A DNA stretch of 64,000 bases, taken from positions 32,290 through 96,289 of the forward strand of contig QPMI01000281.1 in the NCBI GenBank assembly GCA_004431415.1, in the 5' to 3' direction. The translations under genes were made by a program, and so were the position numbers. The notes under the pieces were generated by a model. That model was given only the letters and a program-made list of their open reading frames with translations. It was not told the origin of the DNA and ran no database searches. Below are positions 30,601-37,100 of this stretch, in pieces. This stretch comes from Cyanophora paradoxa CCMP329. Lineage: Eukaryota; Plantae; Glaucophyta. Every line of letters starts with the position of its first letter. Position 1 is the first letter of the stretch.

Positions 30601-31301
30601 CAGGCGCACTACGAGCGGGCCCTCGCCCGCTTCGCCTCGCACACCGACAAGCTCGTCCCGCACATCATCCGCCCCGGTCCGCACCCGCCATCCGCCTCCC
30701 TGCCCGCTTGCCGGCCGCCCGCCCCGACGACCCCTCGCAGTGCGCGCCAAGCGGGGCGAGTCCATCGAGATGAACCTGGAGGGCCTCCTCTACGAGCCCC
30801 ACGAGCGCCCCGCCGCCATCCTCCAGTCGGCCTCCGCCGTGCGCCCCGCGCTGCGCTCTGCCCCCTCGTCCTTGCCCTCAACGCACCCCCGCCAGACTCC
30901 GGGGAGCGGCACCAAGCGCAAGATGCCGCCCTCGGCCTCCTTCGCTGTGCGCGAGCCCCGCCCGATCTCGCGCCATGCCTCGCAAAGCTCACCGGCGTGC
31001 AGGTGGCCCAGAAGAGTGCTCGTGGCATGACCGAGAAGCTGGCGCCCCCGAATGCCCTCAAAGACCGCAAGACCAGCGAGTTCCAGCTCGAGGTGCCTCG
31101 CTTTCAAAGCGTGCCATATGTTGCCCCCATGGCCAGCTCCCCACTGACCGCCCGTGGCTGCGCATACACGAGCAGGCGGTCAGCGAGCTCCTGGCGTGCC
31201 CCTCATGGGTGGGCCTGAACGTCACCACCCGCGACAAGTTCCTCGCCTTCCTCGCCGAGCTCGAGCCCCTCGTCCTTGCCGAGACCACCGCCCAGTTCTA
31301 G
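27611..31301 (+). CDS. Ankyrin-like repeat protein, multi-exon
   Basis: Repeated LTAAINTGNLKVVELC, PLVVALEGGQRKIAKRILEK, YAVQNKHVDVAAFLLEK, ILVAAVNAKSEECLEALVQHGFNVD. C-terminal region unrecognised. Confidence 0.65.
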
Positions 31302-31730
31302 GCTACTAGTGGCCCGTCCGCTTTACATGTCCCCTGAATATGCTGCTGAACATACAGACAACCAAGTACGGGCTTAACTTGACCATGGTTGTGAGACGAG
31401 GTCAGCAGCGCTCAGCAATTTAAAAATTTGCGTTTGCAAATTGCGCAAATCACACGTGCACATGCCTCGTGATCGCGATGATATCGCCATCCATCACTCC
31501 GGATCCGCAACACTCCGTACACGTATAATCCGTTCCATGGCCCTAGCCCACTCCAACGGAGTAGAAGAAGAGCACAGAACCACAACACTCGCCAATGAGT
31601 CGCCATCTACATGTACCCTCCCCGACCTTGCTATATACCAAGCCCAACCTCGTTGTACGTTATCTATTTTATAATAGGTTTATTCCGTGCCAGCAGTACA
31701 GACCAAGCTGCACTACAGACAAGGAGCAAT

Positions 31731-33551
31731 TTACGCCTTCGACTCGAGCACACCCTGGTAGATGGTGGACGAGGTGTACGTGGGCGGGAGCGACATCTTC
31801 TTCGAGTCCTTGAAGGTAGCGTCCTCGATGGCGTTGGTGGAGAGCAGGAGCACGAGGCCGAAGAGGCCCTTGGCGCAGCAGTCGGTGACGGAGAAGACAA
31901 TGATCTCGGCATCAATGTGAATGGACTTGGTGCCCTGGCCAATGATCCAGATGATGGGGTAGATGGGCCAGGTGAGGAAGACCAGGAGGACGAGGATGTT
32001 GTAGGTCTGCAACAGCGTTTCAGAACTACTTCTAGGACGAGGGGGGTTGGGGTAAAGAATCGCTAACCTTCTCAACCTCCGGCGACTTTTCGCGGGCCGC
32101 CTTGCGGAGGGTGGTCACCAGGGAGATGAGGATGGCGATGAAGCCAACGGACGAGAACGCGAACCAGCCCCACTTGGTGCCGGACCTGCAGGGCGGGTTC
32201 AGAAACTCGCACCGCCCATCACAAAAAAGAGACGCACATCGACAGGGCGCCGAGCAGGCCGGTGACGATCATCATGACATCAGCGAAGCAGAGCATCGCG
32301 GCGGTGGCGATCGAGGTGCCAGCCAGGAGGGCGAGGTCGAGGAGGATGAGCGGGGTCGAGAAAGTCCAGTCAATGTAGCGCGCGAAGTAGAACACGCGGA
32401 ACGGCGAGTAGTTCGAGTTGGTCGCCAGCGTGTCGAAGAGCGCAACCGAGCCCTGGCCGCGAGCCATGCAGTAGTACGCGACGGCGGCAATCCACGAGTA
32501 GCAGACGGTGATGTAGTGGAAGCGACGCTTGGTCTCATCGCGGCGGAGGGTGAGGAAGAGGACTGTAGCGAGCGTCAGCTAGCAGCGGCGCAGTGCGCAC
32601 ATATAGCAGGGGGGCGCACAGATCAGGCCGAGGCCAGAGAGGACACCGAAGCCAATCCAGAAGAAGACGACACCGATGGTGGTGCGGTCATCGGGCATGT
32701 ACTGGCCGTAGCCGTTGCCGTTCTTGGCACGGAACATGACGTAGTTCCACTTCTTGATCATGTCGGACACGGAGCTGCAGGTCCTGGTAAGAGACAGCGC
32801 GGAACGAACGCACGGCAAATCGCGAGCGCGGGCGATGCGCACGTGATATCCTTCACGAACGAGCCCTCAGTCATGAGCGACTCGACGAGGGGCTGGCCGA
32901 AGGCGAACTGGTTGTTCGCGTGGTCGCCGGGGATGTACATGGCCGGGCCGCGGGTGGTGGCATCGAAAGTGCCGTCGCCGGGATAAAGGTGGGACACAAC
33001 GCCGTTAGTCGCGCGGACGTAGGTCAGGCCGTTGTACTGGTTCCAGCCAGACGGGCGCAGGTTCCAGAGCAGGTTGCCGGCAGCGTCGGTAGCCTGGTCA
33101 GTGCCCGCGGTGTTGGGGCGGGGGGTGAGGCTGCCCCAAGAACGCTGGCCGAGCATGCCGAGCTGGTAGTCGCCATCGGCCTTGTTGATGGCCTGCGGAA
33201 ACTCCAGTCAGGTGCACACACGCGCCCGTTCTTAGACTACGAGCATACCGAGTACAGGCCAGTAACAGGCGCGCCGGCGCCGTTGGGCTGATAGGTCAGA
33301 TCACGCTGCGCGAAGTCGGCCTTGGTGTTGAGGTTGTAGTCCGCGTAAGTGTTGACATCGCGGGTCTTCAGCGAGGCGAGAGTCGCGTCGATGGCGCGGT
33401 TGGCGGTATCAACCGCCGTCAGGGCCGGGTTGACATCGTTGACTTGGATGCGGCCAGTGGTGTCCACGAGAGTCGCGCCAGCCGGGAGCGCGCCGCCACG
33501 GGGGGATTGAACCGTAACACCGGTTGCTGGATCTTTGGGAATCGCCGACAT
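31731..33551 (-). CDS. Type-1 (microbial) rhodopsin, 511 aa, with ~250-aa N-terminal extension
   Basis: Exons 33551-33249, 33192-32843, 32783-32620, 32562-32238, 32185-32068, 32006-31731 total 1536 nt in frame. Helix C ARYIDWTFSTPLILLDL, helix D ADVMMIVTG, helix F WPIYPIIW, helix G DCCAKGLFG (retinal Lys). Confidence 0.95.
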
Positions 33552-34148
33552 GGTCGCTGTTTATTAGACTGCGCGCAAGCTAGTCAGCGCGGCCTGCAGG
33601 CCTAGCTACTGCGCGACCCGACGAACCGGTTACTACCGCCGAGGACTGACGGTTACAACCGGGGACCACCGCCTCTACCCGTTCTAGACGTGACCCCCCT
33701 CGCTCGAACCCCGGCGGCTCCACTTTCGGCAGTGAGCGCTCTTGCCGCCGGCGCCGGGCCGCACGCACGCGGCGAGCTCCGTAGCATGCGCACGGCTTCT
33801 TGCCACAGTGCGCTTTAAGTTTGTGCGTTCACTTGGGCTTCCCGGAGAGTCCGAAAAAAAGTTCTTGCATGCGCTTGTGCTTCGAGCTCGAGATCTAGAC
33901 GGCGTCGGCAGCTCAGCGCGCGGCTATAGCTATAGCTAGCTGGGGCACATGTACATGCAGATGCACGGCGCGCTCGCATACCATCCGATGATCTTATCGA
34001 TGTCAGTGTGCATAGCCTCGCCGCGCGCGCGCGCCCGCACGTGCACGTGCATGCGCACGTCCACTTGGCACGGCTGCCTGACGCTCCGAGGCTCGGTGCG
34101 AACGATGCCGTTTATTTTCAACACGGCACTCTCACGAACGCTATCTCT

Positions 34149-37100
34149 TCAAGGGATCGGTGAGGGGGTGGGGGAGCGGAGGCGGCGGCGGCAGGGCCCG
34201 CCGCGGGCGACCCCTGAGGAGGGGGCGACGAGCTGCGGGCTGGAGACGGCGAAGATGCTGCCAGCCTTGGAGAGGCCGCCGCGGGGCGGGCGCCCGCGCT
34301 GCGAGGCGGCGGCGGAGGTGGAGCGGAAGGCGCTGGGGGCGACGGGGGTGGTGGAGAGGGTCATGGGGTCCGGGGAGGCGCCGATCGGGACGGGGCCATG
34401 CCCGTCGGCGTCGCTCTCCTCGGGGACGCTGCTGGAGGGTGCCGGTGAGGCGGCCGTGAGGGGCGAGGAGCGGGAGAGGAGCGAGGTGGCCATGGGCGAG
34501 GGCCCGAGGTTCAGCGAGCGCGAGAAGTTCATGTCCCCGACGCCGTCGTCCTCCCGGGCGGCGCTCTCCTCCTCGTCCTCGTCCTCGTCCTCCTCGTCGT
34601 CGGTGGAGGTCTCGGACTGGCTGTCCTTGTGCTTCGTGTCCTTCCAGGTCTGGTAGAGGGGGTCCACGAAGGGGTGCGAGCGCTTCAGGAGGTACGGGTC
34701 GAAGGGGAAGAACGAGTCCAGCTCGTTCGAGGAGCCGCCGGCCGCCGAGGTGCGCGTCGGGATCACCAGCGCCCGGTTCTTGCGCAGCACCGCCGAGCAG
34801 TGCGCGATCTCCAGCGAGTGGCAGACCCGCGCGAACTCCTGCGCGGCGGCTCGCCTCCGTCGTCGCGTGGGGCGGCGGGGCGCGCGGGGCGGGGCGCGCG
34901 GGGCGCGGACCGTGACGACAGTGGGGAGGCACATCTTGAGGGGGTTGAGCCGCGACTCCAGCACGCGCTGCGGGGGGCATCGGCGGGGGCCAGGAGCGCG
35001 CAGCCGAGGCGAGGGGGCACCTGGAGGCGCAGGCCCTTGAGGAAGGAGATGTTGCGGTCGCGCCCGCCGAGGTCCGACGCCTCCTCCAGCAGCTCCCACT
35101 TGTAGCACAGCACGTAGAAGGCCGACTGGCAGACCTGCGCCCCCCGGAGAGTCGGAAGGACGCTCGGAAGTGACGGGAGACGAGGCGGGGAGGGGGCGGA
35201 CGCACCATGTAGAAGACGCAGTGCTTGCCCGCGTCCGGCGCCGTCACGCCCGCGTCGTGCGCGTCGACGTACGCGTGCGCCCAGCGGACCTGTGCGGAGG
35301 CTCGGGGCTCCGGCGGGGCGGATGGGCGGCGGGAAGAGGTCGCACGAGGTGGGAGAGGGCGGCGCGGACGGAGGCGGGCTCGAGGAACGCGGCCCGCCCG
35401 ACGAACGAGCCGAGGTACGCGGCGCTCATCTGCGGGGTAGCCTCGGGAGGCAGCCCCGGGGAAGCGGCGGCGAGGGCCGGTGCAGACCTGGCTCTCCTGC
35501 CTCCCGCCCGCGTCCTCCAGCTTGGCAAAGAGGCGACGCAGGAAGAGGTCGGGGTACTCTCGCGGCCTGGCGCGGCATTGAGGGAAGCCGGGTGGGGGGA
35601 GGGGCGCGCGGGGCCGCACTGGAAGCTGGAGGCGTAGAAGAGGAGGAACTGGACGTACTTGCAGCGCCACGTGGTCAAGACGGTGGACTCGAAGCTGGAG
35701 AGGAGGGCCCGGAAGACGTCCGACCTGCCGGCGGGCGGGGCACGGTCAGGGGCAGGGGCGCCGCGGCTCCGCTTCTCCTCCGAGCTTCGGATCCGGACCA
35801 GGCGACCGTACGCATAAACCGCGACGCAGCGACTCTAGCTGGACCGCCCCCCGGCGACCGCTCTCTCGGAGGGTTCGCGGGAATCGTTAGGCTTCTCCTT
35901 ATGCCCACGCCGCCCGGCTTCATTCAGTGCTTCATATCTCCACTTCTCGAATCCTGGTATAACCGGCGGACCGGACGGTGCGAGGGGAATAGCCCACAGG
36001 CCGCATTAGGGGTCTCGGTCCTCGGCAACGACCAACCGGCTCTCGCGGGCGGGGCGCGGCGGGGCGAGACGCACTGGGAAGGAGGGGAGACGGGGTAGCG
36101 GTGCGTCGTTCGGGAGGTAGGAGGAGAGCCGGAGGGGGAGCGCGGCTGGGAGGAGGAAGGGGAGCCCGGGTCCGACGCGGGGGCGAAGACGGAGCGGAGG
36201 AAGTCAAACATGATGGTCATGAGGTCGTCGAGCTTGTCGGCCTCGACGCTGACCGTCTGCGCGCGGGCGAGCTGCGCCGCGCGGGCCTCCTCGTCCTCGG
36301 GCGCCTGCATGTGCCCGTCCGGCCCGTCCATGTCGAAGAGCTCGTGGTCGTCGTCCGGCGCGTCCTCTAATTTGATCTCCACGTCGATCTCCATGAGCTT
36401 CAGCACCGCCAGGCCGATGATGTCGTCGCGCAGGGACGGCGCGTACTCCGCCACGCGAAGGAAGTTGCGAAGGAAGGCGCGCTGGATGGGCCGCGCCAGC
36501 GCCTTGTAAGGGTAAACAGCCTTCAGAACCGAGAGCAGGATGGAGGAAGAAGAGACGAAGATTGTGAGAAGCTGCTGGAGGATCGAATGAACGTACTCCA
36601 TCGCCCACTTCACCCGTTCTTCCTCTGCGGGAACGCACGCGTCAGCATCATATGCATCCGAGCAGCGCCACATCGCGGGCGGGATCACCGTCTCTCGAGC
36701 GATCGAGCGGCGGGGCGCCCGTCGTCGGATCAACTTGCGCTGTGAACTGGAGAACGAGGACCTCGTAGCACTTGGGCAGGAAGACGGCTGGATTGGAGGA
36801 GATGAATGAGACAACAGTGTTCACAATCAGGTCTCCAATCGCCTCGTCGCCCGTGTGCACGTAAAGCAGCTTGACGAGTTGGTCGAACAGATCCCAGTCG
36901 GCGGCCGTCAGCATATTTATGCACCATGTAAGACCCTTGAGGAGCTTGCGCGCCGACGCAGGCTCCTCCAGCTGCTGCAGAATGTCGGCGAAGGCGCTTG
37001 CGTCCCCCTGTGCGGCAGCGGGCGCATTCAGAAGGCGATCAGGCAAAGAAGAGCGTACATCGCTAATGTGCATCCCGAGGGCGGTTTGCAACCCAGAGAC

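What the first reader, a model, noticed from the sequence alone, without database searches (positions are those of the whole stretch)
31731..33551. Microbial rhodopsin fused to a ~250-aa unrecognised N-terminal domain
Seen: six exons splice in frame to 511 aa. The first hydrophobic helix (IGVVFFWIGFGVLSGLGLIF) begins only near residue 255. The preceding region is complex sequence rich in T/G/N/D/Y/W (e.g. NLLWNLRPSGWNQYNGLTYVRATNGVVSHLYPGDGTFD), not a low-complexity linker, and has the same C-ending codon bias as the 7TM part. It lacks an obvious hydrophobic signal peptide. Known: 7TM type-1 rhodopsins have the N-terminus on the non-cytoplasmic side and pumps usually have short N-termini. Inference: a possibly new pump-type rhodopsin architecture with a folded extracellular/lumenal sensing, anchoring or oligomerisation domain, or an unusual targeting route.
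Basis: partly seen in the sequence, partly recalled or inferred. Interest (0 to 1): 0.8.

Follow-up and report, generated by a model that had tools for sequence, protein, structure and literature searches.

The report
Known Cyanophora opsin, long orphan N-terminus
This is a real, highly expressed Cyanophora paradoxa gene for a bacteriorhodopsin-like light-driven pump. It carries an uncleaved N-terminal region of about 250 residues with no recognisable relatives, but the protein is already annotated and was found by published proteomics, so it is not a new architecture.

Summary
Spliced transcript contigs from three studies join all coding exons into one mRNA. The intron 2 acceptor lies 9 nt further on, so the product is 508 aa, not 511. 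It equals database protein P0001 (Cyanophora paradoxa tig00001206_g7510.t1).

An in-frame TAA 12 nt upstream of the ATG rules out a hidden signal-peptide exon.

Residues 251-474 are a type-1 rhodopsin with the proton-pump residues (R, D, S, D, E, D, K). Residues 1-250 have no hydrophobic segment, no Cys, and no significant match in any library searched.

The interpretation as a new architecture is not supported. The same protein, N-terminus included, is gene model 37147_cds:7184 in PMC4510345. That study detected it as a very abundant cyanelle protein whose N-terminus starts at residue 2, with peptides across exons 1-2. It is also listed as CyapaRh1 in PMC10865886.

Paralogues and relatives also carry non-membrane N-terminal regions of 60-190 aa:
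- The last ~50 aa before helix A are conserved.
- Residues ~133-198 are weakly similar to one paralogue.
- The first ~130 aa are unique.

Fold and function of the extension remain open; both AlphaFold runs were uninformative.

The parts
33627..33643 (-). End of an upstream non-coding 5'UTR exon. Its true start is unknown.
   Evidence: The 16-letter loose end of an X8 contig behind 33569 equals window 33628-33643 (sequence). This rests on a single contig and is weak.
33569..33626 (-). Putative 5'UTR intron (58 nt, GT..AG on the minus strand)
33249..33568 (-). Exon 1: 17 nt of 5'UTR holding an in-frame TAA, then the ATG at 33551. Codes residues 1-101.
   Evidence: TAILS peptides start at residues 2, 16, 19, 35, 38, 51, 53 and 65.
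33193..33248 (-). Intron 1 (56 nt)
   Evidence: Joint seen in X1, X2 and X8 and absent from DNA run X15
32843..33192 (-). Exon 2: residues 102-217 plus two bases of codon 218
   Evidence: A TAILS peptide starts at residue 103.
32775..32842 (-). Intron 2 (68 nt).
   Evidence: Joint 32774/32843 in X1, X2 and X8
32620..32774 (-). Exon 3: the end of the conserved segment next to the membrane, and most of helix A
32563..32619 (-). Intron 3 (57 nt)
32238..32562 (-). Exon 4: helices A (end) to D. Holds R331, D334, S338 and D345, which correspond to BR R82, D85, T89 and D96.
   Evidence: Pfam PF01036; alignment to archaerhodopsin-3; coordinates
32186..32237 (-). Intron 4 (52 nt)
32068..32185 (-). Exon 5: helix E and the E-F loop
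32007..32067 (-). Intron 5 (61 nt)
31731..32006 (-). Exon 6 coding part: helices F and G, with D459 and the Schiff-base Lys K463 (codon 31871-31869), the conserved C-terminal tail, and the TAA stop at 31733-31731
31678..31730 (-). 3'UTR, at least this far
   Evidence: The X1 contig ends at 31678
33100..33551 (-). Coding span for residues 1-132 (interrupted by intron 1): the part of the extension unique to this gene
   Evidence: No similarity to any relative (z 0.7 against P0011). Not found by the word search. Residues 102-132 were also covered by the exon 2 HMMER search.
32902..33099 (-). Residues 133-198: weakly similar to residues 57-118 of paralogue P0011
   Evidence: BLASTP E 0.02-0.06. 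Smith-Waterman z 4.6 on a sub-window chosen after the fact; z 2.95 for the whole regions.
32678..32898 (-). Residues 200-250 (interrupted by intron 2): segment next to the membrane, conserved across the glaucophyte opsin clade (invariant G211, S212, D216, S219)
   Evidence: z 8.1, 5.1 and 4.7 against P0008, P0007 and P0009; alignments

Best explanation
This is one gene, Cyanophora paradoxa tig00001206_g7510 (older model 37147_cds:7184; 'CyapaRh1'). It encodes a 508-aa protein.

The C-terminal half, residues 251-474, is a bacteriorhodopsin-type retinal protein. It keeps the Schiff-base lysine, the proton acceptor and donor aspartates and the retinal-pocket aromatics. It most likely acts as a light-driven outward proton pump (inferred).

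The N-terminal 250 residues are a lineage-specific extension. They have no signal or transit peptide and are not cleaved off.

The extension has three parts:
- a ~50-aa segment next to the membrane, shared by the whole glaucophyte opsin clade;
- a ~65-aa stretch faintly shared with the Cyanophopsin_1 paralogue;
- ~130 residues found nowhere else.

The loops follow the usual positive-inside pattern of type-1 rhodopsins. Published proteomics places the protein, very abundant, in cyanelles even after a Triton wash. I therefore infer that the protein sits in the cyanelle inner envelope with its C-terminus in the stroma. The extension would then lie in the peptidoglycan-containing space between the two envelope membranes. 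On this reading it only has to cross the outer membrane, which would explain the lack of a cleavable signal. What the extension does there (spacer, wall or partner contact, oligomer organiser) is unknown.
For: One mRNA: an X1 contig spans 33566-31678 with all five coding introns removed. X2 and X8 agree, and DNA run X15 keeps the introns.

No upstream coding: an in-frame TAA precedes the ATG.

Identity: the translation equals P0001, EukProt C. paradoxa tig00001206_g7510.t1.

Rhodopsin:
- PF01036 scores 144.6 bits against a 24.6 cut-off.
- The best solved relatives are the proton pumps archaerhodopsin-3 (7e-39), Coccomyxa CsR and bacteriorhodopsin.
- R331, D334, S338, D345, W430, Y433, W437, E451, D459 and K463 sit at BR positions 82, 85, 89, 96, 182, 185, 189, 204, 212 and 216.

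Protein-level evidence (PMC4510345):
- The N-terminal peptide starts at residue 2, with further peptides starting at residues 16-103, from isolated cyanelles.
- Abundance values are 14-23, in the range of a phycobilisome linker. The Triton-washed to whole cyanelle ratio is 1.16, so the wash does not deplete it.
- The authors call it an unprocessed opsin without a canonical transit peptide.

Topology:
- There is no hydrophobic segment in residues 1-248.
- The A-B loop, E-F loop and C-tail carry about 13 Lys/Arg. The B-C, D-E and F-G loops carry about 3-4 (my count on the P0001 sequence).

Family trait: relatives P0011 (446 aa), P0008 (442 aa), P0007 (334 aa) and P0009 (313 aa) have N-terminal regions of about 190, 185, 80 and 60 aa.
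Against: - Pumping, membrane and orientation are all inferred. Nothing here measures them.
- Thr89 is Ser, and Glu194 aligns with Gln, so proton release may differ from BR.
- The three closest relatives have Asn at the donor position. The clade may therefore be sensory rather than energy-converting.
- Cyanelle localisation rests on fractionation and on immunolabelling of a paralogue, as cited in PMC4510345. A co-purifying membrane is not excluded.
- No fold could be predicted for the extension (pLDDT 31.6), so 'domain' may be the wrong word for it.
- Contigs cannot exclude an additional shorter transcript from an internal start.
Confidence: 0.65

Rival explanations
1. The extension is a flexible, fast-evolving tail with no stable fold. 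It would act as a spacer or as an uncleaved sorting region. This is compatible with the gene identity above and differs only in what the extension is.
For: - Residues 1-200 are unrelated to the N-termini of the closest relatives (z -0.5 to 2.2).
- Extension lengths differ widely among relatives, from 60 to 250 aa.
- AlphaFold gave pLDDT under 50 throughout.
- All TAILS neo-N-termini fall within residues 16-103, which suggests a protease-accessible region (my reading).
- Composition is poor in Glu, Lys and Cys and rich in Thr, Gly, Asn, Ala and Asp.
Against: - The charge-hydropathy index is slightly on the folded side (0.10).
- About 28% of residues are hydrophobic or aromatic, with Trp, Tyr and Phe spread through the region.
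- It is not low-complexity sequence.
- A single-sequence AlphaFold failure says little.
- Codon bias is as strong as in the 7TM part.
Confidence: 0.3
2. The extension stays in the cytosol. Either the protein sits in the outer envelope or another membrane, or it is inserted the other way round. The extension would then serve as a cytosolic docking or targeting region.
For: - There is no signal peptide and no N-X-S/T sequon in 252 residues.
- The N-terminus carries only Met removal, as in cytosol-made proteins.
- Moving a 250-aa N-terminal region across a membrane without a signal is unusual (established knowledge).
Against: - The Lys/Arg distribution in the loops fits the canonical orientation, with the N-terminus on the far side (sequence).
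- The protein is not depleted by the Triton wash. By the table legend, that wash should remove the periplasm.
- Type-1 rhodopsins with a cytoplasmic N-terminus have an extra TM0 helix. None is present here.
Confidence: 0.15
3. Parts of the extension are very divergent beta-sandwich (Ig-like) modules, of the kind found in bacterial surface proteins.
For: - Pfam He_PIG matches residues 6-38 at E 0.013-0.046.
- Residues 158-199 resemble the last strands of a 91-aa Ig-like-looking tandem repeat in P0004 (BLASTP 2e-5 per repeat; my reading of the repeat).
- The other weak hits in the large HMMER search included repeat-rich surface-type proteins such as P0006, which carries Big_6 and Big_13.
Against: - He_PIG scores below its gathering cut-off (16.4 against 24 bits).
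- hhalign against the P0004 repeat profile gives only 16% probability over 37 columns.
- Multi-repeat hits inflate E-values, and the shared Thr/Gly/Asn/Asp composition can produce such matches.
- At least one hit, P0003, is junk repeat sequence.
Confidence: 0.12
4. Exon 2 encodes a SOUL/HEBP-like heme-binding half-domain.
For: The only PDB sequence hits for exon 2 are human HEBP2 chains, covering residues 8-102 of the exon (E 0.18-0.77).
Against: - The hits are not significant, and all five are one protein.
- The Pfam SOUL model does not match even at E 10.
- Only about half of a SOUL domain could fit.
Confidence: 0.03
5. The gene model is mis-joined: exons 1-2 belong to another gene, or translation starts at an internal Met.
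For: None found. Contigs alone cannot exclude a minor internal start.
Against: - A single contig spans all exons.
- A peptide begins at residue 2, and further peptides cover exons 1-2, in the same proteomic entry.
- An upstream in-frame stop fixes the ATG.
Confidence: 0.02

Closest known systems
Cyanophopsin_1, the Cyanophora paradoxa opsin of Frassanito et al. 2010 (ACV05065 as cited in PMC10865886 and PMC8292405). Most likely P0007 (334 aa); its 2019 model is P0011 (446 aa, tig00000663_g3005).
   Same: - Same organism.
- 58% identity over the 7TM part.
- Same conserved segment next to the membrane and same C-terminal tail.
- Also has a non-membrane N-terminal region, with faint similarity to residues 133-198 here.
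- Also counted among the abundant cyanelle opsins without a transit peptide.
   Different: - It is a separate locus.
- It has Asn at the proton-donor position, where this protein has Asp.
- Its N-terminal region is shorter, about 80 or 190 aa depending on the model.
- It lacks anything like residues 1-130 of this protein.
- Equating P0007 with ACV05065 is my inference from length, UniParc origin and the Asn. I did not check it against GenBank.
Archaeal and algal BR-type proton pumps: archaerhodopsin-3 (7ZY3, 6GUX), bacteriorhodopsin, and Coccomyxa subellipsoidea rhodopsin CsR (6GYH)
   Same: - Full-length 7TM alignment at E 7e-39 to 5e-37.
- Acceptor Asp, donor Asp, Arg82, Asp212, Lys216 and Glu204 equivalents are all present.
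   Different: - These have N-termini of about 10-20 aa before helix A; this protein has 250.
- Ser replaces Thr89, and Gln aligns with Glu194.
Leptosphaeria maculans rhodopsin (PDB 7BMH, 324 aa)
   Same: A eukaryotic BR-like pump with a moderately extended N-terminus. The alignment starts at chain residue 54.
   Different: Its extension is about 50 aa, not 250. No sequence similarity outside the 7TM part was seen.
Rhodopsins fused to recognised domains: histidine-kinase rhodopsins, rhodopsin cyclases and phosphodiesterases, and the N-terminal fusions listed in PMC10865886 (PPR, 2OG-Fe(II) oxygenase, EI24, Spo11)
   Same: A type-1 rhodopsin with a large extra region in one polypeptide.
   Different: - No recognised effector domain is present here.
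- There is no extra TM0 helix.
- PMC10865886 did not list CyapaRh1 among the rhodopsins with an N-terminal effector domain.
C. paradoxa 'opsin 2' (gene model 10704_cds:3399 in PMC4510345)
   Same: Also has about 190 non-membrane residues before helix A, rich in Gly, Asn, Tyr and Gln, and is also abundant in cyanelles.
   Different: - By the sequence printed in the supplement, it has Gln at the acceptor position and an altered Schiff-base site.
- The exon 2 HMMER search did not pick it up.

Membership tests
Type-1 (microbial) rhodopsin, Pfam PF01036 | Profile match above the curated cut-off | tested here: met
   144.6 bits against 24.6, residues 254-474. Exons 4 and 6 also match on their own.
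Type-1 (microbial) rhodopsin, Pfam PF01036 | Seven transmembrane helices | tested here: met
   The hydropathy scan flags helices A, C, D, E, F and G directly. Helix B is placed by the end-to-end alignment with archaerhodopsin-3 helices A-G.
Type-1 (microbial) rhodopsin, Pfam PF01036 | Schiff-base lysine in helix G, and retinal-pocket Trp/Tyr | tested here: met
   K463 aligns with the Lys216 equivalent. W335, W430, Y433 and W437 are also aligned.
BR-type outward proton pump | Acceptor Asp85, Thr89 and donor Asp96 (the DTD motif) | tested here: inconclusive
   D334, S338, D345: the motif reads D-S-D. Ser is a conservative change.
BR-type outward proton pump | Arg82, Asp212 and the Glu194/Glu204 release pair | tested here: inconclusive
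   R331, D459 and E451 are present. Gln441 aligns with the Glu194 position.
BR-type outward proton pump | Light-driven proton transport | not testable with these tools
   Needs expression and a pH or current assay.
Glaucophyte opsin clade (Cyanophopsin-like) | At least 50% identity over the 7TM part, plus the shared pre-helix-A motif and C-terminal tail | tested here: met
   56-59% identity to P0007, P0008 and P0009. Invariant G211, S212, D216 and S219, and the shared tail.
Glaucophyte opsin clade (Cyanophopsin-like) | Cyanelle (muroplast) envelope location | not testable with these tools
   Literature only: quantified in isolated and Triton-washed cyanelles. Envelope labelling was reported for Cyanophopsin_1.
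Domain-fused (enzyme or effector) rhodopsins | A recognisable effector domain in the same chain | tested here: not met
   Pfam, NCBIfam, PHROGs, PDB and ESM Atlas gave nothing significant for residues 1-252.
Domain-fused (enzyme or effector) rhodopsins | An extra N-terminal helix (TM0) that puts the N-terminus in the cytoplasm | tested here: not met
   The highest 19-residue hydropathy in residues 1-240 is 0.68.
SOUL/HEBP heme-binding proteins | Match to the family profile or a significant sequence match | tested here: not met
   No Pfam SOUL hit at E 10. HEBP2 scores E 0.18 at best.
He_PIG / bacterial Ig-like domains | Profile match above the cut-off over a whole domain | tested here: not met
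   16.4 bits against 24, covering one third of the profile. hhalign probability is 16%.

The most novel reading that the evidence does not exclude
The ~200-residue orphan part is a folded module specific to Cyanophora. It sits in the cyanelle's peptidoglycan-containing intermembrane space and ties or organises one of the most abundant envelope proteins, a working light-driven proton pump, against the wall or outer membrane. That would mean a primary plastid runs a retinal-based proton-motive system beside photosynthesis, using a wall-contact fold not seen elsewhere.
Probability: 0.1. Interest if true: 0.7.

Novelty: already known. Interest (0 to 1): 0.3.

Why it matters
The gene and its long N-terminus are already in the literature, so the finding does not add a new kind of rhodopsin.

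What remains open is real but narrower. One of the most abundant proteins recovered with Cyanophora cyanelles is a pump-type rhodopsin that reaches its membrane without a transit peptide. It carries 250 residues that match nothing known.

Three things would be worth knowing:
- where that region sits;
- whether the protein pumps protons across a plastid envelope;
- how such a protein is imported.

The answers bear on early plastid evolution and on non-canonical plastid targeting. This gene is also the only member of its clade found here that keeps the proton-donor Asp, which makes it the best candidate for a true pump.

Tried and rejected
Searches for relatives of the N-terminal region (all blank):
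- Word search with exon 2: no hit.
- Word search with P0001 residues 1-250: only itself.
- Full HMMER search of 1.84 billion representatives with exon 2: itself plus five repeat-rich proteins. Their matches are short local motifs multiplied by repeats.
- Metagenome scan with exon 2: none.
- ESM Atlas with exon 2 and with residues 1-250: no usable hit.
- Pfam, NCBIfam and PHROGs: nothing above threshold.
- tblastn of all exons against the window: no paralogue here.

Internal features of the extension:
- Internal repeat between exon 1 and exon 2: z 1.8, rejected.
- Beta-strand alternation is no stronger than in shuffles, and the charge-hydropathy index is borderline.

Leads rejected:
- The SOUL/HEBP lead from PDB (E 0.18) was rejected after the Pfam check.

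Structure prediction:
- AlphaFold of residues 1-252 without an alignment gave pLDDT 31.6.
- AlphaFold of residues 190-508 with a 4-sequence alignment gave pLDDT 49.6.
- Both are too poor for fold search, which I therefore did not run.

Not done:
- The Frassanito 2010 paper is not held. Its details are quoted only through papers that cite it.
- The spliced model was never typed or sent as letters. I searched exon by exon by reference. The joined product was used only after one search returned it as database protein P0001.
Full report
**Gene model**

The feature is a minus-strand gene.

I then laid public runs on window 31300-34000.
- Contigs of three runs from three studies (X1, X2, X8) skip five short stretches with GT..AG ends on the minus strand. 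The DNA run X15 carries the stretch unspliced.
- One X1 contig of 1595 nt covers 33566 to 31678 in six pieces, that is all coding exons in one molecule.
- The acceptor of intron 2 is at 32774 rather than 32783. This removes three codons, giving 508 aa instead of 511.
- The runs are only guessed to be RNA by the tool. The removal of introns that the DNA run keeps is what identifies them as transcript-derived.

The translation of the transcript-supported model is identical to database protein P0001. P0001 is EukProt Cyanophora paradoxa P007762, tig00001206_g7510.t1.

A 16-letter loose end of one X8 contig matches window 33628-33643. This implies a 58-nt GT-AG intron in the 5'UTR (33569-33626). 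The evidence is one contig, so this is tentative.

The 17 nt between that acceptor and the ATG at 33551 contain an in-frame TAA. No upstream exon can therefore add a signal peptide.

**How the spliced model was handled**

I searched the model exon by exon, by reference. I did not type or send a joined sequence. The joined product entered the work only as P0001, which the large HMMER search with exon 2 returned. From then on I used it by id.

**The rhodopsin half**

- P0001 matches Pfam PF01036 at 144.6 bits over residues 254-474.
- Against solved structures, the best matches are proton pumps: archaerhodopsin-3 (7e-39), archaerhodopsins 1 and 2, Coccomyxa CsR (5e-37), Leptosphaeria rhodopsin and bacteriorhodopsin.
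- In the printed alignment, the positions of BR Arg82, Asp85, Asp96, Trp182, Tyr185, Trp189, Glu204, Asp212 and Lys216 are kept. They are R331, D334, D345, W430, Y433, W437, E451, D459 and K463 (coordinates).
- Thr89 is Ser338, and Gln441 aligns with Glu194.
- Lys and Arg cluster in the A-B loop, the E-F loop and the C-tail (about 13). The B-C, D-E and F-G loops hold about 3-4 (my count on the sequence). This is the usual orientation, with the N-terminus on the far side of the membrane.
- I infer a light-driven outward proton pump. This is not shown.

**The N-terminal 250 residues**

- There is no hydrophobic stretch. The highest 19-residue hydropathy mean in residues 1-240 is 0.68, against 2.35 for helix A.
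- There is no Cys and no N-X-S/T sequon.
- Codon third positions are as C-biased as in the 7TM half: 58% and 63% C, 2% and 0% A. The other frames lack the bias.
- Nothing significant was found in Pfam, NCBIfam, PHROGs, PDB sequences or the ESM Atlas.
- Nothing was found in the word-indexed protein collection with exon 2 or with residues 1-250.
- Nothing was found in metagenome contigs.
- Reading all 1.84 billion representatives with exon 2 gave only P0001 and five repeat-rich proteins.

I followed the repeat-rich hits.
- They share an 18-40-residue motif with residues 158-199, repeated many times in the targets.
- A profile of the 91-aa repeat of P0004 aligns to only 37 columns at 16% probability.
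- A He_PIG match at residues 6-38 stays below the Pfam cut-off.
- An HEBP2/SOUL match in PDB has E 0.18 and no Pfam support.

I treat all three as unproven leads.

AlphaFold gave no usable model, either for residues 1-252 alone (pLDDT 31.6) or for residues 190-508 with four sequences (pLDDT 49.6). I did not run fold searches on such models.

**Relatives**

Searching with the 7TM part found four relatives at 53-59% identity.

| Protein | Length | Source |
|---|---|---|
| P0008 | 442 aa | transcript-like Logan contig |
| P0007 | 334 aa | UniParc entry |
| P0009 | 313 aa | Cyanoptyche transcriptome |
| P0010 | 315 aa | a second C. paradoxa locus; the model looks broken |

P0007 shares a 90% cluster with P0011, the 446-aa 2019 model of a third C. 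paradoxa locus.

All of these have non-membrane residues before helix A: about 185, 80, 60 and 190 aa for P0008, P0007, P0009 and P0011.

Similarity to this protein falls into three zones.
- Residues 200-250 are clearly conserved: z 8.1, 5.1 and 4.7 against shuffles, with invariant G211, S212, D216 and S219.
- Residues 133-198 resemble P0011 residues 57-118 weakly. BLASTP gives E 0.02-0.06. Smith-Waterman gives z 4.6 on a sub-window chosen afterwards and 2.95 for the whole regions.
- Residues 1-130 match nothing (z 0.7).

So the '250-aa domain' is a conserved membrane-proximal piece, plus an old and fast-diverging piece, plus a unique piece.

Among these proteins only this one keeps Asp at the donor position. 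The others have Asn.

**What is already published**

PMC4510345 is a study of protein N-termini in isolated Cyanophora cyanelles.
[quoted passage not shown] Its sequence is this protein from the first residue on.
- Its TAILS table lists an N-terminal peptide starting at residue 2. It also lists further peptides starting at residues 16, 19, 35, 38, 51, 53, 65 and 103, all labelled cyanelle.
- Its quantification table gives values of 14-23 in whole and Triton-washed cyanelles, with a ratio of 1.16. This is comparable to a phycobilisome linker in the same table.

PMC10865886 lists 'CyapaRh1 BR' of C. paradoxa CCMP329.
- It gives the motifs YADY, YVMF, YSPF, YIDW and DLALL. All occur in this protein, and the first lies in exon 1.
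- That survey did not count CyapaRh1 among rhodopsins with an N-terminal effector domain.

The protein and its architecture are therefore known. The N-terminal region has simply never been analysed.

**Most likely working**

Shown:
- one mRNA and one polypeptide;
- an N-terminus kept apart from Met removal;
- recovery with cyanelles.

Inferred:
- The rhodopsin has the canonical orientation in the inner envelope, pumping protons out of the stroma.
- The extension then lies in the wall-containing space between the two envelope membranes. A protein coming from the cytosol reaches that space by crossing only the outer membrane, so no cleavable signal is needed.
- What the extension does there is open.

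Rivals, scored in the report sections:
- a flexible tail without a fold;
- a cytosolic location;
- divergent Ig-like modules.

**Verdict**

Interest is modest. It lies in an orphan extension on a very abundant plastid-associated pump-type rhodopsin whose function has not been characterised.

Noticed in passing
window 33569-33643 (-): A probable 58-nt GT-AG intron inside the 5'UTR. It is implied by a 16-letter loose end of one X8 contig that matches 33628-33643. The transcript start lies further upstream and is unknown.
   Followed up: partly
window 32620-32650 (-), residues ~262-270: The 2012 gene model printed in PMC4510345 (37147_cds:7184) lacks nine residues of helix A. The transcript contigs and the 2019 model P0001 both contain them, so the older model used a different donor for intron 3.
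   Followed up: partly
P0001 residue 345 (window 32338-32336) against P0007, P0008, P0009: Only this protein keeps Asp at the BR Asp96 (proton donor) position. The three closest relatives have Asn. P0008 also has Glu at the acceptor position.
   Followed up: partly
P0001 residues 477-505 (window ~31740-31830, -): The cytoplasmic C-terminal tail is strongly conserved across the clade: an AIED..FKD motif, then LP..YT..TI..GVL. Such conservation in a tail suggests a binding or sorting motif.
   Followed up: no
PMC4510345 supplementary table 1, entry 37147_cds:7184: All extra TAILS N-termini of this protein fall at residues 16-103 and none later. This may mean that the first ~100 residues are exposed to proteases.
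   Followed up: no
P0007 (334 aa) against P0011 (446 aa), C. paradoxa tig00000663_g3005: The older 334-aa opsin entry begins at an internal Met of the 446-aa 2019 model. Either the early cDNA was 5'-truncated or the newer model is over-extended.
   Followed up: no
P0010, C. paradoxa tig00000734_g3759 (315 aa): This paralogue's model lacks helix D and helix G in the alignment. It is probably a mis-predicted or partial gene model.
   Followed up: no
window 34152-35108 (-): The next ORF upstream on the same strand matches the C-terminal part of RRN3, the RNA polymerase I initiation factor (Pfam PF05327, 5.9e-17).
   Followed up: partly
window 33079-33108 and 32160 (loose ends): Contigs of X2 and X8 branch here into other sequence. 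These are probably k-mers shared with paralogous opsin transcripts rather than alternative isoforms.
   Followed up: no
whole window: No tRNA gene and no Rfam family at gathering score in the 64 kb.
   Followed up: yes
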